DNA of 64,000 nt, from NCBI GenBank assembly GCA_002269645.1, contig NIVC01003328.1, positions 39,884 through 103,883 of the forward strand, read 5' to 3'. The position numbers were made by a program, and so were the translations under genes. Positions 9,969 through 64,000 of the stretch are shown here, in pieces (position 1 is the stretch's first letter; each line of letters starts with the position of its first letter). A model generated the notes under the pieces. The model did not search any database and had not been told where the DNA came from. It saw only the letters and a list, made by a program, of their open reading frames with translations. Source of the stretch: Macrostomum lignano. Lineage: Eukaryota.

Positions 9969-12900
9969 CATGGGCAGATTAAGTGAGCTTTGATCAGCTT
10001 TTACTGCTGTCGATTATCGGCTGTGGAGAGTCGACACTGATGGGGAAGCCGAGGGGCCGCCTGTCAGCTGTGATTTGCAAACGGTCTCTCCCTCCCGGAG
10101 ACTGGCTCAGAAGTGTCTCTCGTTTCTAAGCCCCTCTCTTTCTTTTCCTGTCTCTTCACACACAATTCTCAGCGTCTTTTAAGTGGGCAAAGGAATTAGG
10201 GGAAGAGTTGCTGCCCCCGCCTGGGTCCTCTTTCTATTCCCCTTTCCCTCATCTCGCGTCCCCCAGCGGATTTCCTCGCTGCCACTTCCAGCTATTCCTA
10301 TTTTCTATCCCAGAAGTGGCCAGTCCCCCTTCGGAGACTCATTCGCTCCTGGCGGGTCGGGGTTGGCGTGGCCGCTCGACCATGCGAAATTGTCACGGCC
10401 GCTCTGTCTGGCTTGCCACTTTCCCCGGCTGTATCGCTTGAAGGCTTGTAAAAATGAGGCAGGGTCGAATTTGTGCAAAGCAATAGCACAGAGTCCGGTC
10501 CGCATAGGACGATCGTAGCGACGATCGCATAGGAAAAGCTCCCCTATTTTTGTTTAGCAAGTCTCCGTGTTACCGTGTACCACGTGAAAGTCACAGCAGT
10601 TTGCTGCGGTAATTAGCTGTCGGCCCCGATCTGCAATTGTCGATATTGACCCTTGGGGTTCTCGCGAGTGACGCCCGCGTCAAGGATGCCTGTCTGAGAT
10701 TTTGAGCTGGCGAGTGCAGTACAAACTAGCGGATCAACTGGCTGCTGCGAGACCCCATAGCTAATCGAATGCAGCCTCCGGGGGGCCGAGCTCTCTACCC
10801 CTGCCATGTCCCTTTTTGTGTTCGCCAAATAAATGAAATATTTAGCAATTTAATTAGCAAAAAGTCAGTCTCTCGGGAGCCTTCTGATTATGCTAATTAG
10901 CTGCTTGAATCCAGCCATCGGAGCTGTTCAATTTTCGCTTTTCACGATAGGGGCTTTGCACGCCTGAGTTGGCGTGAGTGCCGCCAATGCAAACTGACTG
11001 CTGCCGCATCCCCGGGGCTCTCGGGCGCTGCCGCGGCTCCTCACTTGTCATGCACGGCGCGGGTTGGGAGGGGCTTATCAGGCCATCAGGCCTGTCTACA
11101 CTCTGTAGCCCTGGGGCGGCGGCGGCCCGTCGGAGTCTGCGGCATGGCTAGGATTGATGCCGGACCTGGCATCAAGTGTCTGCGACTCACCAGCTTCGGG
11201 GCGATTCGCCGCAGTGAGACAGAAAGAAATGTATAAAGGTGACACGGACATATCTTTGCTGGGATATTTCTCCCTTGCATCTTTATCTGGCCAGGGCGCA
11301 GTGTCGCGCCTGGTAGCCATGCTATTATCTCTGCGTGTGTTGCTAGTCTCCCTAATCTCCCGCTGATCCCCCGACCTTGTTTCTCGCTTCCCTGTCAAAT
11401 CGCCTCTTCGTCTGTGTACATTTCTCTGTCCAGAAATGTCATGCAATTTACTGCACAGCGTGACTGAAAACAAGTTTTGTGCTTTTTCGCCTCTGAAACT
11501 TTAAATAACTTGTTGCCATGCCTAGTTGCAAGCTATAAGGTGCTAATTGATTTGGGAACTCCACTCGTGTAAACAACAAAGTGTGAGCAAATAAGAAACC
11601 TGCCTCTTTAATCTCCCAAATTGCTTTGTTTGCCTGCGTGTTTTACACTGTCTACTTTGGCTGCAAATTTAATTGCGACTTCATCGGAGATGCCATCTTG
11701 TCTTTTTGTGTGCGCCCGTCTTCGCATGCACAGCTCATCTCGGCCAAAGTGTCCCACGGGGAATATCTCAATCTGCCGAAATCATGGCTTCGCTTTTCAC
11801 TCCGTTTTCCTTGAGTTCTCCTGCTATCAGTTTCTCTCTCTCTCTCGGCCTGAATTGAGCCTAAATTGAGTTGAGTGTGTGACGCATTGGACAATGTTAT
11901 ATTGCTGGCGCCGTGATCTTTGCTTGGCCCTGGGATGTCTTTCTGTCTGCGACTCTCGACTCCGCTAAGAGGCCGATCATTATCAAGCAAAATTGTGTTT
12001 TTTGTGTTCCACCCCCTCCCCCTTATTCTACCCACTTCCCCTTGCTCCATTGATAGCTCGAGTGACTCATAACTGCATGAATATGGCTATGAAATGAAAA
12101 TGTCTCAATTTCGTTATTTCGCTGGAGTCCCGCCCGCCTGCCACCTGTCCAAGTCCCCTACTCCCCTGTCCAATGCCCTGTCTGTCCCCTGATGGGGAGA
12201 ATTTCCCCGGAGTTCTCTCAATTCGCCATTATCCCCCTTCCGACGTTTCGCATTTATTGCAGAGCCACTTAGAAGTAATGAGGCCGGGCTGTTGTAAGAT
12301 TTTTTTAGTTGTTGTTCCCCGTCCCGCTCGCTTCCCCTGATCATTTATTAACCATGCTGGATTGTCTGCGCACGCCTCATTTCACAGCTTAGCCCCCCTT
12401 AAGTCTGCTAGCGATTGCTGTCTACTTGTCAGTAGCCAGTTGCCACTGACTCAGCCCCCCCCCCAATCGAACGCAGTCAGCCGCTTTCTCACTCCGTTTA
12501 TTCTTCGGCCCGAGCGCTCATTGCATTGCATTCTCTCCATAGCGGGCCTTGAATTATTAACCTGTCGCCTGACCGCCCGATGCCGTGTCTCGCGGCAGTG
12601 AACATTGTGTTTCGATAAACATCGCAGCCCCGCTAACATGCTGCAGTTATCCCGGTGTTTATTGCCTACCTCGATTGTCTCCTGCTTGGTTGCTGAGCAC
12701 GCAATTTTCATCTTGGCTGGCTCTGTTCTACCAGTATCGCTCTACCAGCATTGCTAACCTCACTGATTGACTCATTGGCTTCTTTATCCGCCTGTTTGTG
12801 ACACTCGGACTCCGGGATGAATCAAAGTTAAGATGCTGAGGCAGACTCGGGGGAGCGTGAGGGCGGCCTGTAATGCGCGCTGCCCACGCCCGGCTGCCCC

Positions 12901-15795: not shown

Positions 15796-18700
15796 ATGAC
15801 CGCGCCGCTGTCCTCAGTTGACCCCGAGATGCACGCCATCCTGCGCCGGGAGCGCGAGCGCCAAATGAGCGGCCTGGAGATGATCGCCTCGGAGAATTTC
15901 ACCAGCGCCGCGGTGCAGCAGGCCCTGGCCTCCTGCATGACCAACAAGTACAGCGAGGGCCAGGTCGGCAACCGCTACTATGGCGGCAACGAGGTCGTGG
16001 ACGAGATGGAGTCCATGTGCAAATCCCGAGCTCTGCAGGTGTTCGGTTTGAAATCCGAGGAGTGGGGCGTCAATGTGCAGGTGGGCTGCTGCAGTAGTAT
16101 ACTGTGCTTACGGCATTGCAGTGGGATTTAAGAATTCAGCACTCCCTGTGGATTGTAGCATTTCCTGTGGATTGCAGCATTCCCTGTGGATTGCAGCATT
16201 CCCTGTGGATTGCAGCATTCCCTGTAGATTGCATCATTCCCTGTGGATTGTAGCATTTCCTGTGGATTGCATCATTCCCTGTAGATTGCAGCATTCCCTG
16301 TAGATTGCAGCATTCCCTGTAGATTTCATCATTCCCTGTGGATTGCATCATTCCCTGTAGATTGCATCATTCCCTGTGGATTGCATCATTCCCTGTAGAT
16401 TGCAGCATTCCCTGTAGATTGCATCATTCCCTGTGGATTGCAGCATTCCCTGTAGATTGCAGCATTCCCTGTAGATTGCATCATTCCCTGTGGATTGCAT
16501 CATTCCCTGTGGATTGTGTCATTCCCTGTGGATTGCATCATTCCCTGCAGATTGCATCATTCCCTGTGGATTGCAGCATTCCCTGTAGATTGCATCATTC
16601 CCTGCGGATGGCATCATTTCTTCCCTGCAGATTGCATCATTCCCTGTGGATTGTGTCATTCCCTGTGGATTGCATCATTCCCTGTGGATTGCAGCATTCC
16701 CTGTAGATTGCATCATTCCCTGCGGATGGCATCATTTCTTCCCTGCAGATTGCATCATTCCCTGTAGATTGCATCATTCCCTGTGGATTGCAGCATTTCC
16801 TGTAGATTGCATCATTCCCTGTGGATTGCAGCATTCCCTGTAGATTGCATCATTCCCTGTGGATTGTGTCATTCCCTGTGGATTGCATCATTCCCTGTGG
16901 ATTGCAGCATTCCCTGTAGATTGCATCATTCCCTGCGGATGGCATGATTTCTTCCCTGCAGATTGCATCATTCCCTGTAGATTGCAGCATTCCCTGTAGA
17001 TTGCATCATTCCCTGCGGATGGCATCATTTCTTCCCTGCAGATTACATCATTCCCTGTAGATTGCATCATTCCCTGTGGATTGCAGCATTCCCTGTAGAT
17101 TGCATCATTCCCTGTGGATGGCATCATTTCTTCCCTGCAGATTGCATCATTCCCTGTGGATTGCAGCATTCCCTGTAGATTGCATCATTCCCTGCGGATG
17201 GCATCATTTCTTCCCTGCAGATTACATCATTCCCTGTAGATTGCATCATTCCCTGTGGATTGTAGCATTTCCTGTGGATTGCATCATTTCCTGTGGATTG
17301 CATCATTCCCCTGTGTACATTGCATCATTCCCTGTGGTTTAAAGCATTCCCTGTGGATGGCATCATTTCTTCCCTGCAGATTGCATCATTCCCTGTGGAT
17401 TGCATCATTCCCTGTGCATTGCATCATTCCCCTGTGTACATTGCATCATTCCCTGTGGTTTAAAGCATTCTCTGTAGATTGCAGCATTCCTTTTGTCATC
17501 CCCTATAATACGTGTACGCAGAGCATCCCCTGTAGGCTCTCAAGAGTCGCCCCATCTTGGCTGCCGCATCCCGCAGGCCCTCTCCGGCTGCCCGGCCAAC
17601 TTCGCCGTGTACACCGCGCTGGTCGGGCCGCACGGCCGCATCATGGGCCTGGACCTGCCGGACGGCGGCCACCTCAGCCACGGCTTCCAGACGCCGGCCA
17701 AGAAGGTGTCGGCCACCTCGCTCTATTTCGAGTCCATGTGCTACAAGGTGAGAAGTCCTTGACTGTTGTCTCTGGACACGGTTTGCTGCTCATTGCTGCT
17801 CACATCTAATAATGGGTACTCACAGCTGTCTTAGCTACTCGTGGGTTTCACGGTTTCTCCTGGGTATTCACAGTTTAACAGTTTCTCAGGTATTCACAGT
17901 TTGTTATAGGTATTCACAGTTTTTCAGGTATTCACAGTTTCTCAGGTATTCACAGTTTCTCAGGTATTCACAGTTTTTCAGGTATTCACAGTTTCTCATG
18001 AGCATTCGCGGTTTCTCATGAACATTCTGCACGGTTTCTCAAGGGTATTCACAGTTTGACAGTTTCTCAGGTATTCACAGTTTCTCAGATATTCACAGTT
18101 TCTCATGAGCATTCGCGGTTTCTCATGAACATTCTGCACGGTTTCTCAAAAGTATTCACAGTTTGACAGTTTCTCAGGTATTCACAGTTTCTTAAGTATT
18201 CACAGTTTCTCAGGTATTCACAGTTTCTCAGGTATTCACAGTTTCTTATAGGTATTCACAGTTTCTTATGGCTACTCACGCTACTCACAGCTCGTCATTG
18301 CGCATCTCCCCAACCCACAGGTGGACCCGGTCACGGGGCTCATCGATTACGACGCCCTGGCGGCCAGCGCCCGCCTGTTCCGTCCCAAGCTGATCGTGGC
18401 CGGCATGAGCTGCTACTCGCAGCACTTGGACTACGCCCGCTTCCGGCAGATCTGCGACGAAGTCGGCGCCATCCTCATGGCCGACATGGCCCACGTGTCC
18501 GGCCTGGTGGCCGCCGGGGTGGTGCCCTCGCCCTTCGAGCACAGCGACATTGTCACCACCACCACGCACAAAAGCCTGCGCGGCCCGCGCTCCGCGCTTA
18601 TCTTCTACCGCAAAGGTAAACTTGGGCAACTTGTTTTCGATACATGTCGGAATCCCAGGCGTAGTGCTGAGCGCTGAAGCTGAAGCTGAAAGCTCCTCTA

Positions 18701-19916
18701 TTCGATTTCCCACTGCAGGCACGGTGATGCAGAAAGGCAAAGAGGTGCCGCTCACCTACGAGCAGCGCATCAACGAGGCCGTCTTCCCCGGACTGCAGGG
18801 CGGCCCCCACAACAACGCCATCGCAGCGGTGGCTGTGGCCCTCAAGCAGTGCATGTCGCCGGACTTCAAGGCTTATCAGCAGCAGGTGAGGCTCTGGTTC
18901 AGGTAGCTTTTTAAGCCCCCCCCCCCCCAGATACTCAGTTGCTGGGCCGCCACCCTCCCAGATCCCCAGTTGCCTTAATTCCACCCTCCCAGATCCCCAG
19001 TTGCCTTAATTCCACCCTCCCAGATCCCCAGTTGCCGGAAATCCACCTTCCCAGATCCCCAGTTGCCGGAAATCCACCCTCCCAGATCCCCAGTTGCCGG
19101 ACATCCACCCTCCCAGATCCCCAGTTGCCGGAAATCCACCCTCCCAGATCCCCAGTTGCCGGAAATCCACCCTTCCAGATCCCCAGTTGCCGGACATCCA
19201 CCCTCCCAGATCCCCAGTTGCCGGACATCCACCCTTCCAGATCCCCAGTTGCCGGACATCCACCCTCCCAGATCCCCAGTTGCCGGAAATCCACCCTTCC
19301 AGATCCCCAGTTGCCGGACATCCACCCTCCCAGATCCCCAGTTGCCGGACATCCACCCTTCCAGATCCCCAGTTGCCGGACATCCACCCTCCCAGATCCC
19401 CAGTTGCCGGGCCACATAGACAAACGCCGCCCACTTCCCCATCGCCCGCAGGTTCTGCTGAACGCCCAGGCGCTGGTGGCCCGACTGAAGGAGCTCGGCT
19501 ACTCCATCGTAACTGGCGGCACCGTCAACCACCTCTGCCTCGTGGACTTCCGGCCGCAGGGCGTCGAAGGCGCCCGGGTTGAGAAGTCGCTGGACCTGGT
19601 GGGCATCACCGCCAACAAGAACACCTGCCCCGGCGACCGCAGCGCCCTGCGCCCCAGCGGCCTCCGCCTGGGCACTCCGGCGCTGACCAGCCGCGGCCTG
19701 TGCGAGGCCGACATGCGCCGCGTTGCCGACTTCATCCACCAGGGCGTCCGGCTGGCCATCGACGCCGGAACCAAGCTGGCCGCACCCGGCCGGCTGGCCG
19801 ACTTTGAGCGGCTGCTGCGCGAGGACGCCGAGCTCGGGCCGCGCACCGCCGAGCTGCGCCGCCAGGTGCACGAGTTCGCCAAGGGCTTCGCCATGCCCGG
19901 CCTGGCCGAGTTCTGA
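15796..19916 (+). CDS. SHMT: Serine hydroxymethyltransferase, cytosolic type, ~460 aa; coding exons 15796-16080, 17577-17747, 18321-18615, 18719-18885, 19452-19916
   Basis: Motifs [46 protein letters not shown] (PLP lysine), [18 protein letters not shown] and [13 protein letters not shown]. All introns are GT-AG with matching phases; 1383 nt total. No mitochondrial presequence is visible. Confidence 0.97.
16137..17490. repeat. 19-bp intronic minisatellite GATTGCATCATTCCCTGT(G/A), with a recurring variant cassette GGATGGCATCATTTCTTCCCTGCAG
   Basis: About 70 units inside an SHMT intron. Confidence 0.95.
17860..18275. repeat. 18-bp intronic minisatellite GTATTCACAGTTTCTCAG with a ~107-bp higher-order duplication
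   Basis: Directly visible inside SHMT intron 17748-18320. Confidence 0.9.
18950..19410. repeat. 31-bp intronic minisatellite CCACCCTCCCAGATCCCCAGTTGCCGGA(C/A)AT
   Basis: About 15 units inside SHMT intron 18886-19451. Confidence 0.95.
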
Positions 19917-42739: not shown

Positions 42740-45586
42740 ATGTCTGACCTGCCAGACACCTTCGACTACATTGTCTGGGGCGCCGGCCTGTCTGAGTGCA
42801 TCCTGTCCGCCGCCCTCACCAGGGCTGGGCACTCTGTACTGCACCTGGACAGCTGGCAGCAGTACGGCGGTGCCTGGCAGTCGCCGACTCTGCGTGATCT
42901 CGAGTCTCAGCTGGCAGAGGTCGCGCCCGGCGCCCGCCTGGCCTGGGCTCAGCCGGCCGAGGCCGATGCCTGGCGATCGAGGTCGCGCTATTTCTGCCTG
43001 GACCTGAGTCCGCGTCTCTGCTTCTGCCGGGGCGACACCGTGTCCGCGCTGCTGCAGTCTGACGTGTCCCGCTACCTGGAGTTCCTGCCGGTGTCCGGGC
43101 TGTACACTGTCGACGAGGCCGGCTGTCTGGAGCGGGCGCCGGTACAGCGCGGGCAGCTGTTCCGCAGCGACAGGTACCTGCTAGTTAGCTAGTGCTCAGT
43201 GGACCCGTGTCTCAGTGCTCAGTGGACCCATGTCTCAGTGCTCAGTGGACCCGTGTCTCAGTTCTCAGTAGACTCATGTCTCAGTGCTCAGTGGACCCAT
43301 GTCTCAGTGCTCAGTGGACCCATGTCTCAGTGCTCAGTGGACCCATGTCTCAGTGCTCAGTAGACCCATGTCTCAGTTCTCAGTAGACTCATGTCTCAAT
43401 GCTCAGTGGACCCATGTCTCAGTTCTCAGTAGACCCATGTCTCAGTGCTCAGTCGACCTTATGCAAGCAAGAGCCCTGCATTCTGTGTAATCCGCAACTC
43501 CGCCCCATCGCCAACTCCAGATTCTCGCTTGTGGAGAAGCTGCACTGCGGCCGCTTCGCCGAATTCTGCGTCTCCTGCCAGCCGGACCGGGACCTGGCGG
43601 ACGCGGGCAGCTTCCCAGAGCTGCTGGCCCGTCACGGCCTCCGCTCTGGCCCGGCCCAGCGTCTCTTCGCCCTCGCCGTCGGCATGTCGCCTCCGGACTC
43701 ACCAGCCGAGACCGTCGTGGCCGGCATTCGCCGATTCCTCGCCTCCTGCGGCGCCTACGGGCCCTCGCCTCTGCTGGTGCCGAAGTACGGCGCCTCCGAG
43801 ATCTGCCAGGCCTTCAGCCGGCACGCCGCCGTCTGGGGCGCCGTCTTCCACCTGGGCGCCGATCCGGACAGGCCACCGGCCGAGGCCCGGCGCCGCCTCA
43901 TCGTCAGCGACCGCTTTGCCCAGTCTGGCTGGCTCGACCTCGGCCGGAAGCGCCGCCTGTTCAGGCAGATTCTGGTCACCGACGGGTGCGTCTGCTGGTG
44001 CTGAGGCCCTTCCCGATCCTTCCGGGCACCTCTGCTGCCCTCTCTCCGATCCTTCAGGGCACCTCTGCTGCCCTCTCCGATCCTTCAGGGCACCTCTGCT
44101 GCCCTCTCCGATCCTTCAGGGCACCTCTGCTGCCCTTCCCGATTCTTCCGGGCACCTCTGCTGCCCTCTCCGATCCTTCCGGGCACCTCTGCTGCCCTTC
44201 CCGATCCTTCAGGGCACCTCTGCTGCCCTCTCCGATCCTTCCGGGCACCTCTGCTGCCCTTCCCGATCCTTCAGGGCACCTCTGCTGCCCTCTCCGATCC
44301 TTCAGGGCACCTCTGCTGCCCTTCCCGATCCTTCAGGGCACCTCTGCTGCCCTCTCCGATCCTTCAGGGCACCTCTGCTGCCCTTCCCGATCCTTCAGGG
44401 CACCCTGACTTACCCTGCCCTCGGCCAGCAGCTGTGCCTTCTATTCAATTTGACTGATATTGATGTCACGTGATGTCGCCATGCTTTACACCTATCCACT
44501 CGCAGTTCCTGGGCGCCCCGGTCGGAGGACCAGCAGGACGCTGACGAAGTCCGTCTAGCCGTCTGCATGCTGCCCGGCTTCACTCGGCCGCTTCTGGCGA
44601 TGGAGCTGCCGCCCGAGACTGGCTGCTGCCCGACTGGCACCCGTGTTGTCCACCTGCTGCAGCCCTGCAGCCCGGGAGAGTCGCCGCCCACCGACTGCGT
44701 GCAGTGCGCGCTGGCGCCCTTCACCGACCTGCGGTTTGAGCGGCTGCCCCCCTGCTGCCAGTGCGCGTCTGAGCCGACCGCCGCGAATCTACCAACTGAG
44801 ACTGCTTTGGATAAGAATCTGGGGCAGAGTGACTCAACAGGTCAACCGGCCGACTCAGCGGGTCAACCAGCCGACTCAGCGGGTCAACCAGCCGACTCAG
44901 TGGGTCAACGAGCTGACTCTATGAGTCAAACGGCCGACTCAGTGAGTCAACCAGACGACTCAGTGGGTCAACTGGCCGACTCAGCGAGACAACCAGACGA
45001 CTCAGTGGGTCAACCGGCCGACTCAGCAAGTCAACCAGCCAACTCAACGGGTCAACCGGCCGACTCAGCGATTCAGCCAGCCGACTCAGCGAGTCAATCA
45101 GCCGACTCAGCGGAACAACCAGCCGACTCATCGGGTCAACCGGCCGACTCAGCGGGTCAACCGGCCGACTCAGCAGATCAACCGGCAGCAGCCGCCGATG
45201 ACCAGCAGCCATTCCGCAAGCCCAGCTGCATTCTGTCGGTCTGCTTTGTCCAGGACGACCTGAGCGACTGCCTGAACCCCGGCGCCCTGCCGGACAATGT
45301 GACAGTCGTTCCGAGCCTCTATTCGGACTTCGACTTCGACGTGGCTTTCCAGCGGGCCAAGGAGCTGTTCGACGAGCTCTGCCCCGGCCAGGAGTTCCTG
45401 CCGCGGCCGCCGGACCAGGAGGACCTGGTGTTCGATCAGCCCGCCTCCGAGGCGCCGACAGTCAACGGCGACTGTGGCGAGGGCGAGAACGAGGGCGCGG
45501 CGGAGGCAGCCCCGCCTGCGACGCCTGCTGCCGAGGTAACCCCCAACGGCGACTCCAGCGAAAGCCAGCCTGAGAACGCGCGCTGA
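42740..45586 (+). CDS. CHM: Rab escort protein (REP/choroideremia family, RabGGTase component A), ~659 aa; exons 42740-43173, 43521-43985, 44506-45586
   Basis: DYIVWGAGLSECILSAAL..G..VLHLD...YGGAWQS, DLSPRL..RG....LLQSDVSRYLEF, PLLVPKYG..EICQAF and the C-terminal ELCPGQEFLPRPPDQED are REP-type rather than GDI-type. GT-AG introns with matching phases; 1980 nt total. Confidence 0.92.
43190..43456. repeat. 23-bp intronic minisatellite CTCAGTGCTCAGTGGACCCATGT
   Basis: Lies in REP intron 1. Confidence 0.93.
44006..44405. repeat. 31-bp intronic minisatellite CCGATCCTTCAGGGCACCTCTGCTGCCCT(CT/TC)
   Basis: Lies in REP intron 2. Confidence 0.93.
44831..45188 (+). repeat. 21-bp tandem repeat x17 encoding (QPADSAG)n within the REP reading frame
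   Basis: Unit GACTCAGCGGGTCAACCAGCC; the frame stays open throughout. Confidence 0.9.
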
Positions 45587-45939
45587 TTGTCATCGAGTTA
45601 ATGCGAACAAATCATTGTACTAATGAGCCAATTATTCTGTAATATTAGCATCCATTTTCTCTATCCAGCCTTTGCAATTGTCGAATGCTTATATTGATAT
45701 GTACTGGTTGGTGATTGGGCTGGAGTCCTGGCGCACAGTCGTGATAATCAATGATTTTGCTATTCAGACTTATTTATGATGCCTTCGATTTCAGATCTAT
45801 TCGGACTCGAGATGGCTTGTGAGCTAATTATTTTGAAAATGTATTAATAAAACCAAATGCGTCGGTCTGTCTTTATTTGCGCTATCGGATTCCATCATTT
45901 CTGATTTGCTTGCTATGGGAGCTGTGGAGACTTTGGTTG

Positions 45940-46676
45940 TGAATCTCCCTGCTTTGGATCAGTGAATCTCCTTGCTTTGGATCAGCGAATCTCCTTGCTT
46001 TGGATCAGTGAATCTCCTTGCTTTGGATCAGTGAATCTCCTTGCTTTGGATCAGTGAATCTCCTTGCTTTGGATCAGCGAGTCTCCTTGCTTTGGATCAG
46101 TGAATCTCCTTGCTTTGGATCAGTGAATCTCCTTGCTTTGGATCAGTGAATCTCCTTGCTTTGGATCAGTGAATCTCCTTGCTTTGGAGCAGCGAATCTC
46201 CTTGCTTTGGATCAGTGAATCTCCTTGCTTTGGATCAGTGAGTCTCCTTGCTTTGGATCAGTGAGTCTCCTTGCTTTGGATCAGCGAATGTCCTTGCTTT
46301 GGATCAGTGAGTCTCCTTGCTTTGGATCAGTGAGTCTCCTTGCTTTGGATCAGCGAGTCTCCTTGCTTTGGATCAGTGAGTCTCCTTGCTTTGAATCAGT
46401 GAGTCTCCTTGCTTTGGATCAGTGAATCTCCTTGCTTTGGATCAGTGAATCTCCTTGCTTTGAATCAGTGAGTCTCCTTGCTTTGGATCAGCGAATCTCC
46501 TTGCTTTGGATCAGTGAGTCTCCTTGCTTTGGATCAGCGAATCTCCTTGCTTTGGATCAGCGAATGTCCTTCTTTGGATCAGTGAGTCTCCTTGCTTTGG
46601 ATCAGCGAATGTCCTTGTTTTGGATCAGCGAGTCTCCTTGCTTTGGATCAGCGAGTCTCCTTGCTTTGGATCAGTC
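45940..46676. repeat. 23-bp intergenic minisatellite GAATCTCCTTGCTTTGGATCAGT
   Basis: About 32 units between the REP AATAAA (45847) and the GSTCD start. Confidence 0.95.
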
Positions 46677-46790: not shown

Positions 46791-49232
46791 ATGGCAACTG
46801 CGTCATTGGCAACGTCGCTAACCTCCGTGGTTGCCATGGCGACACCCGGCGGCAGCAATGCGGAGTCTGCAGAGCGGCTGCTAGCCAAACTGAGCCTGGA
46901 GACTCCCGAGCAGCCCGATAGTTCCACTGCAGCACCACCACCAGTCGCTAAGGACGCCGATTCGGTTCCTACGGACGCCGATTTGGTTCCTACGGACGCC
47001 GCTGTGCCGCTCGATCTCTACCTGGAATCTGACGAGTCCGGCCGCGCCCTGACTCTGCAGTCCAAAGCGGCGCTACTGATGGCGCTGTACCCGGAGCCCC
47101 GGCCCTGCCGAGTCCACCTGACTGGCGGCTCTGCTGATGAGGCTGAGGAGAAGCTGGCTGGCGAAGTCGTGCTCGTCCACGGCGATGCCCGCAACCCCGG
47201 CACGGAGCTGCCGGCCCTGGCCTGTCCGGCCGTGCTGTACGCCGGCCTGCCTTCCGTTGTACGCGCCCTGGCAGAGCGGGGCGGCGCCGTCTGTCAGGCG
47301 CTGCTGGGGCCGCACAGCGTCTGCCTAAAGGCCTGCAAGGAGCGGTCGCGGTGGACCCGCCTATGCGAGCTGACCTGTCCCGGCCAGCTGGGCACCTGGG
47401 CGCTGCCGGGCTCCGACGATGCGCAGCCGCCCGCCTGCCTGGCGGACCTGGAGCTGGCGTTGGAGCGGCCGCGCTACAAGCCGAGGCCTTTTCTGGAGGG
47501 CAAGCGGCCTACTCTGGTGAGAATTCTGGAGTTATTTCCTACTCAAAGTAGTAAAGTACTCGTAGTTCAACGGTATCGCATCTGTCTCGTGCTGGAGTCG
47601 TTCTGGAGACCAAACCTCAAGGCTCAGAGTTGAAGCCTGCGTACGGATTGCTCGCATGCTCAGGGGCAGCCGCGCAGGGTATACAGCGGCCCTGACTTTA
47701 TCACCGTCAGTTATGCTGCATCAGTCCCCTACTTTATTCTCCATTATCACCTTTGTCTTCGGGGGCCGTAGCCCAGTGGTCCAGCGAAAGTCGCGCGAGT
47801 TACCACTAAGAACCACTGAGTAGTCCTTGGTGGTTACCGCTGAGCTCCTCTGCCTCTCGTTCTCTGTATTGCGCTCAATAAGCGGTGTCAATTAAAATTT
47901 CCCAAAACTGTCCAATCCTAGGTGGACATTCTCATTGTCTGCTACTTGCGCGACGTTGCCCGCAAGGCCAACCGGCCGCCGCTGCCGCTGGGGCATCGAA
48001 CCGCGGACCTGCTGGCCAGACTGAGCGCCGATCCGGCCTTCGCCGCCGCCGCCGCCGTAACCGACAAGTTCGAAACCGAGTACCGACCGGCCGCCGGGGA
48101 CGCGCCGCGGCTCACCGACAAGCGGGCTCAGGTTGGGGTTTGCGTACTCGAATGCTTTTAAACATGCGTTTAAATTTTATGCACCAATATTTTTGCAGAC
48201 TAATTCGCTTCAAAGGATAGTGCTATCGCTACTAGTTAGTAGGCTGTAATGTGCATATAAAGTCGACAATTTTCAAAATTGGTGCATTTGTGAGGAACTC
48301 CTTTTTATAAAAATTCTTACATTTTTTCCGCATCTTTAGCATACCCAGATCGCCTACTGAAAAGTAGCAAGTAAAGAATGTGAAACTAATCTCTTATGGC
48401 GTGTACCTCTCACATGTATTGTTTCTTAACCCCCGAAACCCCACAGGTGCCCGGTCTGTGCACCGAGTCGCTGCGCCAGCTGCTGGACCGCCTGGAGCCG
48501 GCCGTGTCGCTGCCCTGGCAGCCGGAGGCCGAGGCTTCCCCGCTGCCGCCCCTGCCCGACTGGCTGGCCGCCGAGGTGCCGCCGGAGCGGGCGGCTCGCA
48601 AGCGGCAGCAGCTGGCCAGCCTGGCCGCTGACGTCCTGCCGTTGGCCCGGCCCGGTCACGTGATCGTAGACTTCTGCAGCGGCTCCGGTTACCTGGGCCT
48701 CCTGCTGGCGCACCTGCTGCCGCAGTGCCGCATCGTGCTGGTGGAGAACAAGCTCGAGTCCCTGCAGTTCGCTCTGGACCGGCTGGGCCAGCTCGGGCTC
48801 CCCAACGTGCGCATCGTGCAGAGCAACCTCTGCAACTTCCGGGCCGCCTTCGACATCGGCGTTGCCCTGCACGCCTGCGGCTCCGCCTCCGACCTGGTGC
48901 TGGAGGCCTGCGTCCGCGCCCGCGCCGCCTGCGTGCTGTCGCCCTGCTGCCACGGCGCCACCAAGCCCGGCCCGGGCCTCGCCTATCCGCGCAGCTCCGC
49001 CGCCTCGGCAGCCGGCCTGGCCAGCCTGGAGCACGCGCAGCTGTGCCACGCCGCTGACCGAATCACCGGCCGGCAGTCCCGCCAGCTCTTGGCTAAGCGG
49101 GCCCTGCGGCTGCTGGACAGCGACCGGGCCCTGGCCATGCGGGAGGCCGGCTACGGCCGGGTGCGGCTGGCTCTGATGCGGCCGGACACCTGCTCGCCTA
49201 AGAACTCAATCCTGGTGGCCTGTCCGAGCTGA
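46791..49232 (+). CDS. GSTCD: GST C-terminal domain-containing protein with a class I SAM methyltransferase domain, ~573 aa; exons 46791-47516, 47922-48131, 48447-49232
   Basis: CLKACKERSRWTRLCELT, TLVDILI, RKRQQL, IVDFCSGSGYLG, ENK, GVALHACG.ASD, PCCHG, LLDSDRA and CSPKN match GSTCD as remembered. Phase-0 GT-AG introns; 1722 nt total. An alternative ATG is at 46836. Confidence 0.93.
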
Positions 49233-49689
49233 GGTCCCGCCTGCTGCCAGCCGGGATCAGGGCACCATTAGACATAGAAAAGTGCAGAGTTGAATTTTTT
49301 GTTTTAAAATGTGCTGCGTATCGGGCACCGTGCCAAATGATTGTCTGCTGTAGTCATTGGGTTTTGCATAACAAGTTCTGGTCTGCAACACATTCAACTG
49401 TTCCCAGCTGTTTTAACTTTGACTTTGGATTACATTGGCGATTCTGCGACATATTTGTTTCAATAGATTTGCTGCTCACGCTGCACTTCATGTGTACTTT
49501 GCTTGTTTTGATAATCATTTTCAAAGTTGCTGCCTTTTTACAGTAGTACACGGTGCGGTAGACAGATGCGCAATAGCTAGATCTATTTAGTAGGTAGATG
49601 CGCACTAGGTAGATCTATTCTTTATATAGATGCATAGTTGGTAAATCTTTTTCTTAGATAGATGCGTGGTAGGTAGATCTATTCAATAG

Positions 49690-50080
49690 ATAGATGCACA
49701 GTGGGTAAATCTGTTCAGTAGATAGATTCACAGTGGGTAGATCTGTTCAGTAGATAGATTCACAGTGGGTAGATCTGTTCAGTAGATAGATTCACAGTGG
49801 GTAGATCTGTTCAGTAGATAGATTCACAGTGGGTAGATCTGTTCAGTAGATAGATGCACAGTGGGTAAATCTGTTCAGTAGATAGATTCACAGTGGGTAG
49901 ATCTGTTCAGTAGATAGATTCACAGTGGGTAGATCTGTTCAGTAGATAGATTCACAGTGGGTAGATCTGTTCAGTAGATAGATTCACAGTGGGTAGATCT
50001 GTTCAGTAGATAGATTCACAGTGGGTAGATCTGTTCAGTAGATAGATTCACAGTGGGTAGATCTATTCAGTAGATAGATG
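49690..50080. repeat. 32-bp minisatellite TAGATAGATTCACAGTGGGTAGATCTGTTCAG (degenerate copies from ~49580)
   Basis: Lies between GSTCD and TMEM126. Confidence 0.93.
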
Positions 50081-50085
50081 TGCAG

Positions 50086-51444
50086 TGGATAGACAGATTG
50101 AATTGCACTGCTGAACTACCTGACGTTCTGCTGGCGTCGGCACCTGACCGGACGGCGACCGCGCAGCGGCAAAACATTCAAGGCTCCCCTGGCTACGTGG
50201 TGTACTACCACCACAGCCAGCGGGGCTCCCTGCCGCCCGGCGCGGTGCCGCTGAACCCCCAAGAGGTGCTGGATCGTCGACACCACGCGGCAAATGCCTG
50301 GCGGCCCCGCGAGCAGGTCTGGTCGCTGCCGCTGCACGACTACGTCTGCACCTACCCCACCCTGGTCAGCTCCGCCCTCATCGCCGGCAACCACCGGCTG
50401 ATGCTGAGCCTGGGCGTGGCCAGGATGTCCTACTCGATGGCCTGCTGCATTTTCCCGACTTACATGCAGGTCTGCGGCTCGTGCTGATCCCCGAGACTCT
50501 GCCCGTCTTCCAGTGACCCCTGCCACTCTGCCCGTCACCCAGTGACCCCTGCCACTCTGCCCGTCACCCAGTGACCCCTGCCACTCTTCCCGTCACTTAG
50601 TGACCTGCCACTGTCCGTCACCCAGTGACCCCTGCCACTCTGCCCGTCACCCAGTGACCCCTGCCACTCTGCCCGTCACCCAGTCACCCCTGCCACTCTT
50701 CCCGTCACTTAGTGACCTGCCACTGTCCGTCACCCAGTGACCCCTGCCACTCTGCCCGTCACCCAGTGACCCCTGCCACTCTGCCCGTCACCCAGTGACC
50801 CCTGCCACTCTGCCCGTCACCCAGTCACCCCTGCCACTCTTCCCGTCACTTAGTGACCTGCCACTGTCCGTCACCCAGTGACCCCTGCCACTCTTCCCAT
50901 CACCCAGTGACCCCTGCCACTGCCCGTCTCCCAGTGACCCCTGCCACTCTGCTCGTCACTTTTGTCACTCAACGGCACGGCACAGCACCTGACTCCAACG
51001 AATTGAGTCTCCATCCCCCATCAACCCCAACCCGACCAGGTGATGGCGTCCAAGCAGATGCTGCTGAACAGCCTGCTGACGAACCCAATCCAGTGCCCGC
51101 CCTGCGTGATGCTGCGTGGCGCCGGCCTCGGCCTGGCCTTCGGCATCCTGATGCCCTACGTGTACAGCTTCTTCCTGCACTCCACTGCCGCGCGCATTCT
51201 GCAATCCGCGCCGGTGCCCGCGAACCTGACCGACTGGCGCCAGCAGTTTGCGCTGTTGCGCCGCCTGGTCACCGGGGAGAAGCGCCTGCTAGCCGTGCTG
51301 GCGCCCGCGGTGTCCATCTACGGCGCGTGGCTGGCCGACCGGATGCGGCGGCACAGCATCTTCCTGAACGACGCCAGCAGGCGGGCTCTGCAAGACCTGC
51401 CAAATCAGCGGGGCGGCGGCTCGCAGGCGGAGGAGGCGGGCTGA
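50086..51444 (+). CDS. TMEM126: TMEM126-family mitochondrial inner-membrane protein; exons ~50086-50469 and 51040-51444; start codon unresolved
   Basis: LPPGAVPL...W...EQVWSL, NHR..L.LG, the CPPC..LRG..LGL.FG.L.P motif and C-terminal TM helices resemble TMEM126 (DUF1370). Phase-0 intron GTCTGC...GACCAG. Confidence 0.75.
50497..50960. repeat. 29-bp intronic minisatellite CTGCCCGTCACCCAGTGACCCCTGCCACT (internal GTCAC/GTGAC inverted repeat)
   Basis: Lies in the TMEM126 intron. Confidence 0.93.
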
Positions 51445-55041: not shown

Positions 55042-60117
<5,076 letters not shown>

Positions 60118-60204: not shown

Positions 60205-60680
60205 TTGCTTGGCTGCATGTACAGCTTGACTGCATCTACAGCTTGGTTGGATGTACAGCTTGGCTGCATGCACAGCTGGACTGCATGTACAGCTTGGCTG
60301 CATGTACAGCTTGGCTGCATGTACAGCTTGGCTGCATGTACAGCTTGACTGCATGTACAGCTTGGCTGCATGTACAGCTTGGCTGCATGTACAGCTTGGC
60401 TGCATGTACAGCTTGGCTGCATGTACAGCTTGGCTGCATGTACAGCTTGGCTGCATGTACAGCTTGGCTGCATGTACAGCTTGGCTGCATGTACAGCTTG
60501 GCTGCATGTACAGCTTGGCTGCATGTACAGCTTGACTGCATGTACAGCTTGGCTGCATGTACATCTACAGCTTGGTTGGATGTACAGCTTGACTGCATGT
60601 ACAGCTTGACTGCATGTACAGCTTGGCTGCATGTACAGCTTGGCTGCATGTACAGCTTGGCTGCATGTACAGCTTGGCTT
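60205..60680. repeat. 17-bp minisatellite GCATGTACAGCTTGGCT downstream of the Mnx stop
   Basis: About 28 units. Confidence 0.95.
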
Positions 60681-61475: not shown

Positions 61476-61662
61476 GGATCCCCAATCTACCCCCACAACA
61501 CACCCAGGATCCCCAATCTACCCCCACAACACACCCAGGATCCCCAATCTACCCACAACACACCAGGATCCCCAATCTACCCCACAACACACCCAGGATC
61601 CCCAATCTACCCCACAACACACCAGGATCCCCAATCTACCCCACAACACACCCAGGATTCCC
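61476..61662. repeat. ~30-bp minisatellite CCCCAATCTACCCCACAACACACCCAGGAT just downstream of the PCGF stop
   Basis: About 6 units. Confidence 0.9.
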
Positions 61663-61687
61663 AGCAGATGTTATCGTCAAGTTTCAG

Positions 61688-62317
61688 TCAGGAGTCGCGC
61701 GAGCTCCTGGCCGCAGCGGAGTCGCGGTCCGCGATCACGTAGGTGAGGGCGATGGGGTCCCGCCAGTCGGCCTGGCCGTCCGTCTCCCTGCAGCGCAGTT
61801 TCTGCAGCTCGGCGAGGCTCCAGTAGGCCGGCAGGCGGGTGTTGCGCCTGTAGATATCCACCGTGCCGGTGGCGGACAGGCGGTGCTGGTCGCAGAGGAA
61901 GCCGGCGACGTGGCCGATGGTGGCCTGCATTGCCAGCAGCAGGAAGATCTGGCGCTGGCCTCCGCGCGGGCTCAGCGCGATCTGCACCGGAGTGGCCAGC
62001 TCCAGCGGCAGCGACTTCTCCAGCTCCAGGCTGAAGTCCAGCCGGCGATGCACCTCGCTGGCCCGCAGGCCGGGCACCAGCTTGTACACCAGGTCCTGCA
62101 GCACCCGGTCCTGGCGCAGACAGCCCTCCTCCTCCAGCTTGAGCTCCTGGCCGCACTCCGGACAGCGGCTTGGCCGGACAGTCTGCAGGTGGCCGACAAT
62201 ACAAGACTTGCAGAACACGTGGAAACAGTCGGTGAGGCGGGTGGCGTCAATCAGGTAGCCAGCGCAGAGGCTACACACTAGGATGTTGTTGAGCTGCCTG
62301 AGCTGCGGCCTGCCAGA
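61688..62317 (-). CDS. PCGF: Polycomb group RING finger (PCGF/Psc-BMI1 family) protein, RING plus RAWUL, ~210 aa; no in-frame genomic ATG ahead of the RING
   Basis: LNNILVCSLCAGYLIDAT..TDCFHVFCKSCIV.HL....CPEC and RQDRVLQDLVYKLVPGL, plus RAWUL-like QATIGHVAGFL. Acceptor CTCAATCCCCGCAG ends at 62318. Confidence 0.9.
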   Translation of the reverse strand, partial: SGRPQLRQLNNILVCSLCAGYLIDATRLTDCFHVFCKSCIVGHLQTVRPSRCPECGQELKLEEEGCLRQDRVLQDLVYKLVPGLRASEVHRRLDFSLELEKSLPLELATPVQIALSPRGGQRQIFLLLAMQATIGHVAGFLCDQHRLSATGTVDIYRRNTRLPAYWSLAELQKLRCRETDGQADWRDPIALTYVIADRDSAAARSSRDS

Positions 62318-64000
62318 CTGCGGGGATTGAGGTGAGCAGTCAGCACTCAGCTTGAGCAGTCAGTCTGGGCACGACATTAAAGCTGCTAATCTAGATGACG
62401 TAGTGACTTCAATTGGAATATATAGAAGCATTATAAAATAATTAAAAATTCTTTGTAAGGCTGAGGTCATACACCTGAACACATAAATAAAAGACCTCTA
62501 AAGCAATGCTATATGGTTTTTGGTGCTCGATTAGTTTGTCCATTTTTTAAATGTTTCTAAAAAATGGAACTGCCCGAGGACGCGCGGCGTTATTAAAGAC
62601 AGACGCCTATGTTTTCGTATGTCTATGTCCGAAACCCATAGAATTGAAAAGAGGGACGCAAAAGCGAGAGAAGACACAGCATCAAAGGAGTTCTAACTGA
62701 CGCGTTTATCACGTACTGGACATGAACCTGGGGTAAAGTGGAAGTGGTCCTACAACTGCCAGTCTGTCTTCTGCTAAACAAGGGACTCCTAAAATAGCAT
62801 TAGAGTGCTAGCTCTAGAAGTCCCTGGCTAAGCCCTGATTTACCCTAAAAGTTATTCTATAAGCTGTGCTACTTGTTTGGCATTACGAGGCCATAGTCAA
62901 TGAATTCCAAATATATAAACAACTTCAGTGTCACTGGGGTGAGTTTGGGCCATAGACAGCTTGCAAAAGTAGTCCCTGCAGCAGGTTTGTAGAGCTACAG
63001 AATCAGAGAGCAACCAGCTAAGCCAAAATGGAGTTCGCCTTGGCTTTGGTGGGTGCCAGCAGCACAAGTGTATATCAGGTGTTGCAGACCCATGGACCAA
63101 CTGCAGGGAATCAGTGAGATGTTTGCAAATATGGTAATTCCAAGTTCTGCAAGATATTGATTGCCATTTGCCATGCAAAGAGATGGCTAGTACTCTCTTT
63201 TAAGTGTACATCCTCATTCAAGATCTTGGACTTGGGAATGTCACAGCCAGCCCTGGCAGAAGCACCCACAGAGTATGTCACTGGGTCTTATTCATGATGT
63301 ATGACAATACCAGTTTATACACTGCCATAGGACTATTAGTAGAAAATGCTGCCTTTTTTCACCAAATTCCTCTGACAAGGATAGTTGTATTTGAAAATAA
63401 TTGTGCAATTAATTATATAACTCACAATCATATATCCAGAAACTATCATTTCAAACCATTGGGAATATATAATTCAAGCCAATCAATTTAATTAACTAAA
63501 GTAGCATTCATTTTATAATATTTCTAGCATTGCAAATATGTTCTAAGAATTATCTATTAGGCCTAACTTTGATATCTAAATAAATATAGATATGACAAGT
63601 GATAACAAAATTAAAAACAAAATATTAGCAAGATTAGGCAGTAGGTTGAATGATTAAGACTAAAAATGCAACTGTTATTTAATATCTTGTTTTTGCTATA
63701 CTAAAACATTCTGCCTTAAATAATAACATTTGTACTTTTATAATGTTATGTTTCTAAAAAGAGTATTGACTTATATTTATAACTATGGCTATGTTATTGA
63801 CAAAATTTTATATTTAAGGCTCCTTCTTTAAGCTAGTGATAATTGGCATAGGTGCACTCCCAGGGGGAAGAAGGATAGTCACCTCTTTTAGCAAAGACCT
63901 AAACAGAAAATAAAATAAAGGAAAGATTAAACAAGTGAATTTTTTATAAAAATATAGTCTAGGTAGAGCCATTCTATCTAGGTCTTTACTATCTAGAATT

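What the first reader, a model, noticed from the sequence alone, without database searches (positions are those of the whole stretch)
62276..62380. PCGF gene apparently lacks its own start codon and is built to receive AUG from a spliced leader
Upstream of the RING the frame is closed by TGA (62362-62360) with no ATG; the first in-frame ATG (61930) lies after the RING. A good acceptor (branch-like CTGAC at 62343-62339, then CTGCTCACCTCAATCCCCGCAG) opens exactly in phase 0 at 62317. An AUG joined there gives M-SGRPQLRQLNNILVC, the N-terminal length typical of BMI1/PCGF proteins. Flatworm spliced leaders end in AUG, which has been shown to act as initiator Met in schistosomes. The nearest strong upstream donor (62474, after ATG TGT TCA G) is phase 1 and fits no acceptor. 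If correct, a Polycomb PRC1 subunit depends on trans-splicing for translation.
Basis: partly seen in the sequence, partly recalled or inferred. Interest (0 to 1): 0.75.

Follow-up and report, generated by a model that had tools for sequence, protein, structure and literature searches.

The report
ATG-less flatworm Polycomb RING gene
A Polycomb-type RING finger gene of the flatworm Macrostomum lignano has no start codon of its own and most likely borrows the AUG at the end of the trans-spliced leader. This trick is already known in flatworms, and here it rests on sequence logic and incomplete public gene models, not on RNA reads.

Summary
The sequence facts are exactly as described. On the minus strand, a 209-codon ORF (62317-61691, stop 61690-61688) encodes a BMI1/PCGF-type RING plus a ubiquitin-like C-terminal domain. 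TGA 62362-62360 closes the frame, and all three frames carry a TGA within 45 nt upstream. The first in-frame ATG is codon 130. The first CAG after a pyrimidine tract (15 of 20) opens the ORF in phase 0.

The window is the end of contig NIVC01003328.1 of Macrostomum lignano. Its 35-nt spliced leader ends in ATG and is annotated on about 45% of conserved genes. The deposited RNA-seq-based gene models of all three genomic copies are 5'-incomplete. They start 3, 9 and 12 nt after this acceptor, with no Met and no upstream exon.

An SL-donated AUG is therefore the best explanation (about 0.55), but no junction read was available. Phase 0 is weak evidence, because 4 of 9 nearby AGs share it.

The only consensus donor upstream (ATT|GTGAGT, 63425) is phase 0 behind an open ATG (63449). 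That arrangement arises by chance in 39% of simulations.

The mechanism has been known in flatworms since 2006, so this is at most a new member of a known kind.

The parts
61691..62317 (-). Single-exon ORF of 209 codons (SGRPQLRQLNNILVC...SSRDS) with no ATG before codon 130. The stop TGA lies at 61690-61688.
   Evidence: Translation. The protein is identical in all three genomic copies. The diverged copy L003 differs by 3 substitutions, all third-position and synonymous.
62030..62311 (-). PCGF/BMI1-type C3HC4 RING domain with its flanking helices (ORF residues 3-96). The Zn ligands are C15, C18, C31, H33, C36, C39, C52 and C55.
   Evidence: Pfam zf-C3HC4 E 2.5e-8. PDB sequence hits to BMI1, PCGF1 and PCGF5 at E 1e-20 to 1e-29, against 1e-6 for RING1B. 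Top Foldseek hits are BMI1/PCGF5 chains. All ligand columns are invariant in alignment A3.
61727..61984 (-). C-terminal ubiquitin-like (RAWUL-like) domain, ORF residues ~112-197.
   Evidence: Pfam RAWUL only E 0.08, below cut-off. The AlphaFold model shows strand-strand-helix-strand-helix-strand at pLDDT 73-90. Foldseek hits polycomb ULD 5fr6 at E 0.02, TM(target) 0.64.
62318..62343 (-). Proposed 3' splice (trans-splice) site A1: branch-like CTGAC (62343-62339), a pyrimidine tract, and CAG ending at 62318.
   Evidence: 15 of the 20 nt before the AG are pyrimidines, the best of the 9 nearby AGs. It is the first CAG after the last stop in any frame. The hexamer CCGCAG is a near-match to the published trans-acceptor motif [T/C]TNCAG. 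One copy (L001) has a 1-nt shorter C-run here, as expected for non-coding sequence.
62340..62362 (-). Three TGA codons (62362-60, 62349-47, 62342-40), one in each reading frame, closing every frame upstream of the acceptor.
62360..62377 (-). ATG 62377-62375 followed by five codons and a TGA (MSCPD*). This is a mini-ORF in the putative outron, or the first exon of the weak cis model (ATGTC|GTGCCC...GGCAG|G).
   Evidence: The donor GTGCC lacks both the A(+4) and the G(+5) of the species consensus GT[G/A]AG.
62309..62311 (-). Second CAG (A2), 8 nt downstream of A1. An exon starting at 62309 would put an SL-AUG out of frame (MAAAQAAQQHPSV*), and fits only the ATG62377 cis model.
   Evidence: The annotated CDS of copy L001 starts at the first full codon after this site.
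63420..63449 (-). Rival cis first exon: ATG ATA GTT TCT GGA TAT ATG ATT (63449-63426), then donor GTGAGT (63425-63420). It is phase 0, and the intron to 62318 would be 1108 nt.
   Evidence: It is the only GT[AG]AG in the 1683 nt upstream and is present in all three copies. A 1st-order Markov simulation gives at least one such phase-0 candidate in 39% of sequences. The segment lies in the most diverged, AT-rich part of the flank, and L003 carries a non-synonymous change in it.
61476..61663 (-). Minisatellite of 29-30 nt units starting 25 nt after the stop codon, in the presumed 3' UTR. AATAAA lies at 61219-61214.
   Evidence: and the sequence. The array is much longer in copy L003.

Best explanation
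This is a single-exon PCGF-like gene (Polycomb group RING finger) of Macrostomum lignano.

Proposed mechanism:
- Its pre-mRNA is probably transcribed from a promoter within the ~1.7 kb AT-rich flank.
- The pre-mRNA is trans-spliced at CAG|TCT (62318|62317) to the 35-nt spliced leader.
- The last three bases of the leader, AUG, then sit directly in frame with the ORF. They serve as the initiator codon, giving M-SGRPQLRQLNNILVC...
- Everything upstream is discarded as an outron. That includes the ATG 62377 mini-ORF and the three TGAs.

Shown:
- The ORF, its closure upstream and its lack of ATG.
- The acceptor and its phase.
- The species, and the AUG at the end of its SL.
- The 5'-incomplete public gene models.

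Inferred:
- That this acceptor is used in trans.
- That the SL AUG is the codon translated.
For: (1) No genomic start is possible by read-through. TGAs in all three frames lie within 45 nt upstream, and the first in-frame ATG is codon 130, past the RING.

(2) The gene looks functional. The RING ligands are intact, the fold is PCGF-like, and the protein is identical in three copies with only 3 synonymous differences.

(3) The species and its SL fit. The contig is M. lignano Mlig_3_7. The SL ends in ATG, and this ATG is conserved in the genus and described as a 'translation start codon'. 45.3% of conserved genes and 85% of neoblast genes are annotated as trans-spliced.

(4) A1 is the first CAG after the stops and has the best pyrimidine tract. 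An SL-AUG placed there is in frame.

(5) The deposited annotation was built from RNA-seq, with SL sequences trimmed or unmappable under end-to-end mapping. It gives 5'-partial CDSs in all three copies, starting at +3, +9 and +12 from A1. None has a Met or an upstream exon. These calls are the GenBank models. A cis-spliced ATG exon would normally have been assembled into them.

(6) HMMER alignments to BMI1 and PCGF1 begin at the Arg encoded by 62311-62309 (R-x-x-[IL]-x-x-LN). Coding sequence therefore reaches to within two codons of A1. It would be truncated by the downstream acceptors.

(7) There is precedent. The flatworm SL 3' AUG is used as initiator Met, and more than 40 S. mansoni cDNAs require it (Cheng et al. 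2006, as summarised in PMC9851317).
Against: - No SL-junction read, cDNA or peptide was seen. The protein collection holds no M. lignano transcript-derived version of this gene, or of a neighbouring gene.
- The annotated CDS starts are scattered at +3, +9 and +12 rather than exactly at the acceptor. They were therefore probably not set by an SL-read peak.
- Phase 0 is shared by 4 of 9 nearby AGs.
- The acceptor hexamer CCGCAG does not match [T/C]TNCAG exactly.
- A consensus cis donor with an in-phase open ATG exists 1108 nt upstream.
- The perfect conservation of the 114 nt before the acceptor is not specific. The low-divergence tract continues for more than 2.7 kb downstream.
- From my own reading of the SL sequence, the SL AUG has a weak Kozak context (U at -3).
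Confidence: 0.55

Rival explanations
1. Ordinary cis-splicing from a tiny upstream first coding exon. The exon is ATGATAGTTTCTGGATATATGATT (63449-63426), or only ATGATT from 63431. It would be joined through donor GTGAGT (63425) and a 1108-nt intron to the same acceptor at 62318, giving MIVSGYMI-SGRPQ... or MI-SGRPQ... The same acceptor could also be shared between cis- and trans-splicing.
For: - It is the only GT[AG]AG donor in the 1683 nt upstream. It is phase 0, sits behind an open ATG, and is present in all three copies.
- The intron length equals the species' mean of 1.1 kb.
- Sharing of acceptors between cis- and trans-splicing is reported in parasitic flatworms.
Against: - Such a candidate arises by chance in 39% of simulated flanks.
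- The segment is 23-27% GC and lies in the most diverged part of the flank (5.75%). L003 carries a Gly>Glu change in it.
- None of the three RNA-seq-based deposited models contains this exon or a Met.
- Neither predicted protein is in the 15-billion-sequence collection.
Confidence: 0.17
2. Cis-splicing of a 63-nt intron from ATG 62377. Exon 1 ends ...ATGTC, the intron is GTGCCC...GGCAG (62372-62310), and exon 2 starts at 62309, giving MSPQLRQLN...
For: - The product is in frame.
- The annotated CDS of copy L001 begins at the first full codon after 62309.
- ATG, GT and both AGs are conserved in all copies.
Against: - The donor TC|GTGCC lacks +4A and +5G of the species consensus GT[G/A]AG, which is found at 65% of donors.
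- The model must skip the first CAG (62318), which has the better pyrimidine tract, only 8 nt upstream.
- It removes the Arg that aligns with the conserved Arg of BMI1/PCGF1.
- No deposited model starts with MS, and MSPQLRQ... is not in the collection.
Confidence: 0.06
3. No splicing supplies an AUG. Either translation starts at a near-cognate codon (for example CTG 62359 or 62350, directly after the TGA) on an unspliced mRNA, or only the C-terminal 80 residues are made from ATG 61930.
For: In-frame CTG codons follow the TGA in the window copy and, in the shifted frame, in L001 too.
Against: - Sole reliance on non-AUG initiation is rare (general knowledge).
- The C-run indel in L001 changes the peptide that would be encoded between the CTG and 62317.
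- The deposited models do not extend upstream of 62317.
- Starting at Met130 would discard an intact, conserved RING.
Confidence: 0.07
4. A start-less, decaying or non-translated paralogue. It could be a 5'-truncated intronless retrocopy of a PCGF gene, kept in three copies only because of recent genome duplication.
For: - The CDS is intronless and short (209 codons).
- The RAWUL half is highly diverged (Pfam E 0.08).
- The closest relatives in the collection are only 49-55% identical, and only over the RING.
- Divergence in the CDS (0.48%) is no lower than in 2 kb of downstream non-coding DNA (0.6-0.7%), so constraint is only weakly demonstrated.
Against: - The frame stays open for 209 codons at 64-70% GC, with all eight Zn ligands intact.
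- All three differences between copies are synonymous.
- The model is confidently folded in both domains.
- The gene is transcribed, since it has RNA-based models.
- No SL remnant lies upstream, as a retrocopy of a trans-spliced mRNA might carry.
Confidence: 0.08
5. A start exon lies further upstream than the sequence available: beyond the contig end at 64000 in this copy, or beyond the transposon insertions in the other copies.
For: - The window copy has only 1683 nt of upstream sequence.
- 35% of donors in this species lack the consensus, and 66 ATG-open-GT combinations exist in the flank.
Against: - In L001 and L003 the flanks stop being homologous 2-2.7 kb upstream. They carry different transposon and retroelement remnants.
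- No same-strand gene is annotated within 10 kb.
- The deposited models lack any such exon.
Confidence: 0.07

Closest known systems
Schistosoma mansoni mRNAs that take their initiator Met from the 3'-terminal AUG of the spliced leader (Cheng, Cohen, Ndegwa & Davis 2006, J Biol Chem 281:733; read here only through PMC9851317, PMC12582326 and PMC5832876)
   Same: It is a flatworm whose SL ends in AUG. The recipient ORF has no AUG of its own before essential sequence. The acceptor places the SL AUG in frame.
   Different: The species is free-living (Macrostomorpha) and the gene is different. Here the trans-splice junction and the use of the AUG are predicted, not demonstrated.
slORFs: reading frames created by start codons within spliced leaders (slORFfinder, PMC9851317)
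   Same: The concept is the same: the leader supplies the start codon, and the ORF shares the stop and frame of the annotated (partial) ORF.
   Different: slORFs are called from SL-containing RNA-seq reads plus ribosome footprints. None of that evidence was available here.
BMI1/PCGF4, PCGF1 and PCGF3/5, the RING-RAWUL subunits of Polycomb repressive complex 1
   Same: The N-terminal RING with flanking helices matches: 44-48% identity to BMI1 over ~95 residues, and E down to 1e-29. A ubiquitin-like C-terminal domain follows. The N-terminal arm is of similar length (15 residues before the first Cys, against 17 in BMI1).
   Different: The protein is only 210 residues, with a short linker. The RAWUL is not recognisable by Pfam at its threshold. 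The gene is intronless. No close orthologue (55-100% identity) was found outside the three genomic copies. Pairing with RING1 is untested.
Ordinary M. lignano trans-spliced gene with its own ATG, for example the GDI/REP-like gene in the same window (ATG 42740)
   Same: A pyrimidine tract plus CAG lies just upstream of the coding start. In the GDI-like gene the site is ...ccatcctTTCAG|ctttaagcgATG, a perfect [T/C]TNCAG.
   Different: There the genomic ATG lies 9 nt after the acceptor, and the SL AUG would be stopped at once (ATG CTT TAA). In the PCGF-like gene there is no genomic ATG, and the SL AUG is in frame.

Membership tests
Flatworm mRNAs initiated at the spliced-leader AUG | The organism has an SL RNA whose leader ends in AUG | tested here: met
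   The contig is M. lignano. The SL CGGTCTCTTACTGCGAAGACTCAATTTATTGCATG is reported in PMC8629364. The terminal ATG is conserved in the genus.
Flatworm mRNAs initiated at the spliced-leader AUG | The mRNA is trans-spliced at the acceptor in question (SL-junction reads or cDNA) | not testable with these tools
   No RNA reads are reachable. The collection holds no transcript-derived protein of this gene. The only indirect evidence is the three deposited 5'-partial models, which start 3-12 nt after the acceptor.
Flatworm mRNAs initiated at the spliced-leader AUG | The SL AUG is in frame with the main ORF, with no stop between | tested here: met
   The exon start 62317 is codon position 1 of the 209-codon ORF. 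This is conditional on that acceptor being the one used.
Flatworm mRNAs initiated at the spliced-leader AUG | No genomic AUG is able to start the conserved protein | tested here: met
   All frames are closed upstream, and the first ATG is codon 130. Caveat: a possible cis exon lies at 63449-63426.
Flatworm mRNAs initiated at the spliced-leader AUG | The SL-derived Met is actually used (reporter, ribosome profiling or N-terminal peptide) | not testable with these tools
   This needs an experiment.
PCGF (Polycomb group RING finger) proteins | N-terminal C3HC4 RING of the BMI1/PCGF type | tested here: met
   Pfam zf-C3HC4 E 2.5e-8. PDB BMI1/PCGF1/PCGF5 at E 1e-20 to 1e-29, against 1e-6 for RING1B. 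Top Foldseek hits are BMI1 and PCGF5.
PCGF (Polycomb group RING finger) proteins | C-terminal RAWUL (ubiquitin-like) domain | tested here: inconclusive
   Pfam RAWUL E 0.08, 13.8 bits against a cut-off of 33.5, and no hit for the C-terminal 100 aa alone. The AlphaFold model shows a beta-grasp-like domain at pLDDT 73-90. Foldseek hits polycomb ULD 5fr6 at E 0.02.
PCGF (Polycomb group RING finger) proteins | Heterodimer with RING1A/B inside PRC1 | not testable with these tools
   Not addressed.
Downstream gene of an SL-resolved operon | An upstream gene on the same strand within ~1 kb (repeat-adjusted) | tested here: not met
   There is no same-strand ORF or annotated gene in the 1.7 kb available here. 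In the near-identical copy L001 the nearest annotated gene is a transposase-like ORF on the opposite strand, 6.4 kb upstream.

The most novel reading that the evidence does not exclude
A PRC1-type RING subunit in a regenerating flatworm can be translated only after spliced-leader addition. Two CAG acceptors lie 8 nt apart (62318 and 62310). The first puts the leader's AUG in frame. The second puts it out of frame, giving a 13-codon dead-end ORF. Acceptor choice during trans-splicing could therefore act as an on/off gate for a chromatin regulator, in an animal where 85% of stem-cell genes are trans-spliced.
Probability: 0.1. Interest if true: 0.55.

Novelty: new member of a known kind. Interest (0 to 1): 0.3.

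Why it matters
If confirmed, it adds a chromatin regulator to the list of flatworm genes that cannot be translated without the spliced leader. It would be the first explicit case in the transgenic model M. lignano.

The practical consequence is for annotation. Such genes are deposited as 'partial' proteins without Met, as here in all three copies, unless the leader's ATG is added back. A genome-wide screen for 5'-partial CDSs that begin at a phase-0 acceptor would repair many models.

It does not change what is known about the mechanism, which was described in schistosomes in 2006.

Tried and rejected
- I looked for transcript-derived versions of the protein. The homologue search returned only the three genomic models. 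Exact look-up of ten possible N-terminal variants (M-SGRPQ, MSPQ, MIVSGYMI-SGRPQ, MI-SGRPQ, M-LRQ, Met130 start, stop-to-stop and others) found none. This absence is uninformative, because a neighbouring conserved gene of the window also has no M. lignano entry.

- I first mapped the window to locus L001. This was wrong. The window is L002 (NIVC01003328.1), and L001 is a near-identical duplicate.

- I treated the perfect conservation of the 114 nt before the acceptor (0 differences, against 2-6% upstream) as a sign of a promoter or outron. I rejected this, because equally low divergence continues for more than 2.7 kb downstream. It is a regional boundary, not a local constraint. TATA-, CCAAT- and CRE-like words at 62424-62396 are noted but were not tested.

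- I tried to obtain the deposited annotation of the rest of the window as a calibration. Four exact look-ups of window ORFs found nothing.

- I tried to derive local intron examples from GSTCD homologues. Only one exon aligned.

- I searched for an SL RNA gene or an SL remnant in the window and found none. There was no Rfam or tRNA hit.

- I searched papers and supplements for a Macrostomum PCGF and found nothing.

- The upstream flank is not a repeat found elsewhere in the sequences held.
Full report
WHAT IS THERE

On the minus strand, an uninterrupted frame runs from 62359 to the stop TGA at 61690-61688. The frame is closed upstream by TGA 62362-62360. ATG 62377-62375 lies before that stop and reads only MSCPD*. 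The first in-frame ATG after the stop is 61930, which is codon 130 counted from 62317.

I add that each of the three reading frames carries a TGA within 45 nt upstream of 62317, at 62362, 62349 and 62342. A single-base assembly error therefore cannot connect ATG 62377 to the ORF.

WHAT THE GENE IS

- Pfam finds a C3HC4 RING (E 2.5e-8) and a sub-threshold RAWUL (E 0.08).
- Against solved structures, the N-terminal 95 residues match BMI1, PCGF1, PCGF4 and PCGF5 at E 1e-20 to 1e-29. RING1B reaches only 1e-6.
- An AlphaFold model (mean pLDDT 77) has a RING domain, a disordered linker, and a strand-strand-helix-strand-helix-strand domain at pLDDT 73-90.
- Foldseek puts BMI1 and PCGF5 chains first. 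It finds the polycomb ubiquitin-like domain 5fr6 at E 0.02.
- All eight Zn ligands are invariant columns in the alignment with relatives.

The label 'PCGF-like' is therefore justified for the RING, and probable but not proven for the RAWUL. The closest relatives in the protein collection are only 49-55% identical, and only over the RING.

WHERE THE WINDOW COMES FROM

The gene model is on record for GenBank assembly GCA_002269645.1. The window matches contig NIVC01003328.1 exactly, and position 64000 is the contig end. Only 1683 nt of upstream sequence therefore exist for this copy.

NIVC01 is the Mlig_3_7 assembly of Macrostomum lignano. A neighbouring gene call on a sister contig carries the GenBank name 'hypothetical protein BOX15_Mlig012075g10 [Macrostomum lignano]'. 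That also shows the gene calls of this assembly in the collection are the deposited annotation.

Two more copies exist:
- L001 (NIVC01000225.1) is almost identical to the window.
- L003 (NIVC01001097.1) differs by 2-6% in the upstream flank.

All three copies encode the same protein. L003 differs at three third-codon positions, all synonymous. The stop codons, ATG 62377 and both CAGs are conserved. L001 has one C fewer in the C-run just before the CAG, which shifts the upstream frame and fits non-coding sequence.

WHAT IS KNOWN ABOUT THE SPECIES

- M. lignano has one 35-nt spliced leader, CGGTCTCTTACTGCGAAGACTCAATTTATTGCATG.
- 30% of genes are annotated as trans-spliced.
- The cis donor consensus is GT[G/A]AG (65% of donors), the cis acceptor is CAG, and the trans acceptor is [T/C]TNCAG (44% of sites).
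- 45.3% of genes with a human homologue, and 85% of neoblast genes, are annotated as trans-spliced.
- The terminal ATG is conserved in M. cliftonense and M. hystrix, and those authors call it a translation start codon.
- All flatworm leaders end in ATG.
- Cheng et al. (2006) showed that this AUG serves as initiator Met. [quoted passage not shown]

The proposed mechanism is therefore established biology for the phylum.

EVIDENCE FOR THE SL-AUG MODEL AT THIS GENE

The acceptor at 62318 is the first CAG after the last stop and has 15 pyrimidines in the preceding 20 nt. That is the best of the nine AGs between -60 and +45.

The strongest indirect support is the deposited annotation. It was built from RNA-seq with StringTie/TACO, end-to-end STAR mapping, and de novo transcripts from which SL sequences had been trimmed. 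Its CDSs for the three copies are 5'-partial:
- GRPQLRQ... (window copy, starts at +3 from the acceptor)
- PQLRQ... (L001, +9)
- QLRQ... (L003, +12)

None has a Met and none has an upstream exon. The local protein sequence is identical in the three copies. The different starts must therefore reflect locus-specific transcript ends, not homology trimming (inference). Three transcript models ending within 12 nt of the predicted exon boundary indicate that genome-colinear coverage stops there. A cis-spliced ATG exon would normally have been assembled, whereas SL-bearing read ends do not map end-to-end (inference).

In addition, HMMER alignments to BMI1 and PCGF1 begin at the Arg encoded by 62311-62309. 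Coding sequence therefore reaches to within two codons of the acceptor. It would be cut by the downstream acceptors.

WEAKNESSES

- I could not reach any RNA read. The collection holds no transcript-derived form of the protein, and none of ten possible N-terminal variants is on record. This absence says little, because a neighbouring conserved gene also lacks an M. lignano entry.
- The annotated starts are not exactly at the acceptor, so they were probably not set by an SL-read peak.
- Phase 0 is weak evidence by itself. Four of the nine nearby AGs (exon starts 62350, 62317, 62302, 62293) would put an SL-AUG in frame.
- The hexamer CCGCAG misses the published trans-acceptor motif at one position.
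- The 114 nt before the acceptor are identical in all copies. The same low divergence continues for more than 2.7 kb downstream, so this marks a regional boundary rather than a constrained promoter or outron. For the same reason, constraint on the CDS is shown only by the 3-of-3 synonymous pattern.

RIVALS

The only GT[AG]AG donor in the 1683-nt flank is ATT|GTGAGT at 63425. It is phase 0 and preceded by open ATGs at 63449 and 63431. It is present in all three copies, and the intron to 62318 would be 1108 nt, the species' mean. A first-order Markov simulation of the flank yields at least one such candidate in 39% of sequences. The segment is AT-rich, lies in the most diverged part of the flank, and has a Gly>Glu change in L003. 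None of the deposited models contains it. I give this rival about 0.17. It is not exclusive of trans-splicing, because flatworm acceptors are often shared between the two modes.

It needs a donor (TC|GTGCC) lacking both consensus positions. It must skip the better first CAG in favour of one 8 nt downstream, and it removes the conserved Arg. I give it about 0.06.

The remaining rivals share the rest:
- near-cognate initiation, or use of Met130;
- a start-less decaying paralogue;
- an exon beyond the available sequence.

Beyond 2-2.7 kb upstream, the two longer copies are no longer homologous. They carry different transposon and retroelement remnants, and no same-strand gene is annotated within 10 kb. 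An operon context is therefore not supported.

VERDICT

- The mechanism is already known in flatworms. The specific gene would be a new member.
- The useful consequence is practical. M. lignano CDSs deposited as 5'-partial that begin at a phase-0 acceptor are candidates for completion with the leader's ATG.
- A simple count of four junction strings in the public RNA-seq runs would settle this case.

Noticed in passing
window 62309-62320 (minus strand): Two CAG acceptors lie 8 nt apart. SL addition at the first puts the leader AUG in frame with the RING ORF. SL addition at the second gives MAAAQAAQQHPSV* and no RING protein. The deposited CDS of copy L001 starts at the first full codon after the second site.
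   Followed up: partly
window 62325-62322; L001 9981-9984: The C-run before the acceptor has 4 C in the window and in L003, but 3 C in the otherwise near-identical copy L001. This is either a real indel in non-coding sequence or a homopolymer error of the long-read assembly. Most other L001/L002 differences are also single-base indels.
   Followed up: partly
window ~62432 (115 nt upstream of the acceptor), against L003: There is a sharp step in divergence between the window copy and L003. Upstream of this point it is 2-6% substitutions plus indels. For at least 2.8 kb downstream it is 0-0.7%, including non-coding DNA. This looks like the edge of a gene-conversion or recombination tract between duplicated regions.
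   Followed up: partly
window 61476-61663; L003 ~10640-11320: A 29-30-nt minisatellite starts 25 nt after the PCGF stop codon, in the presumed 3' UTR. It has ~6 copies in the window and L001, but is expanded several-fold in L003.
   Followed up: partly
window 2-4111, 16143-17490, 18922-19410, 43191-43458, 44006-44404, 45939-46675, 49578-50093, 50496-50959, 58751-59363, 60207-60679: The window is packed with minisatellite arrays of 17-32-nt units. The largest has 240 copies of a 17-mer at the window start. Several create long spurious ORFs on both strands.
   Followed up: no
window 42740-43192 (+): This is the first coding exon of a GDI/Rab-escort-type gene (Pfam GDI E 1.7e-18). It has a textbook trans-splice-type acceptor, TTTCAG, 9 nt before its own ATG. 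An SL AUG there would be stopped at once (ATG CTT TAA). A 23-nt tandem repeat follows directly, probably inside an intron.
   Followed up: partly
window 48396-49232 (+): This is a methyltransferase-domain ORF, 44-50% identical to the C-terminal half of vertebrate GSTCD proteins. No M. lignano protein for it is present in the protein collection, although it looks like an intact conserved gene.
   Followed up: partly
L001 2562-3623 (-) and L003 ~1700-5700: The two longer copies of the locus carry different mobile-element remnants upstream. L001 has a 353-aa 'transposase domain-containing' ORF, present in at least 6 genomic copies. L003 has a GC-rich stretch with a weak reverse-transcriptase match. 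Homology between the copies ends 2-2.7 kb upstream of the gene.
   Followed up: partly
window 62396-62424 (minus strand): TATATAT, CCAAT and TACGTCA (CRE-like) words lie 80-107 nt upstream of the acceptor. They could mark a core promoter giving a ~75-nt outron. This was not tested, and no statistics were done.
   Followed up: no
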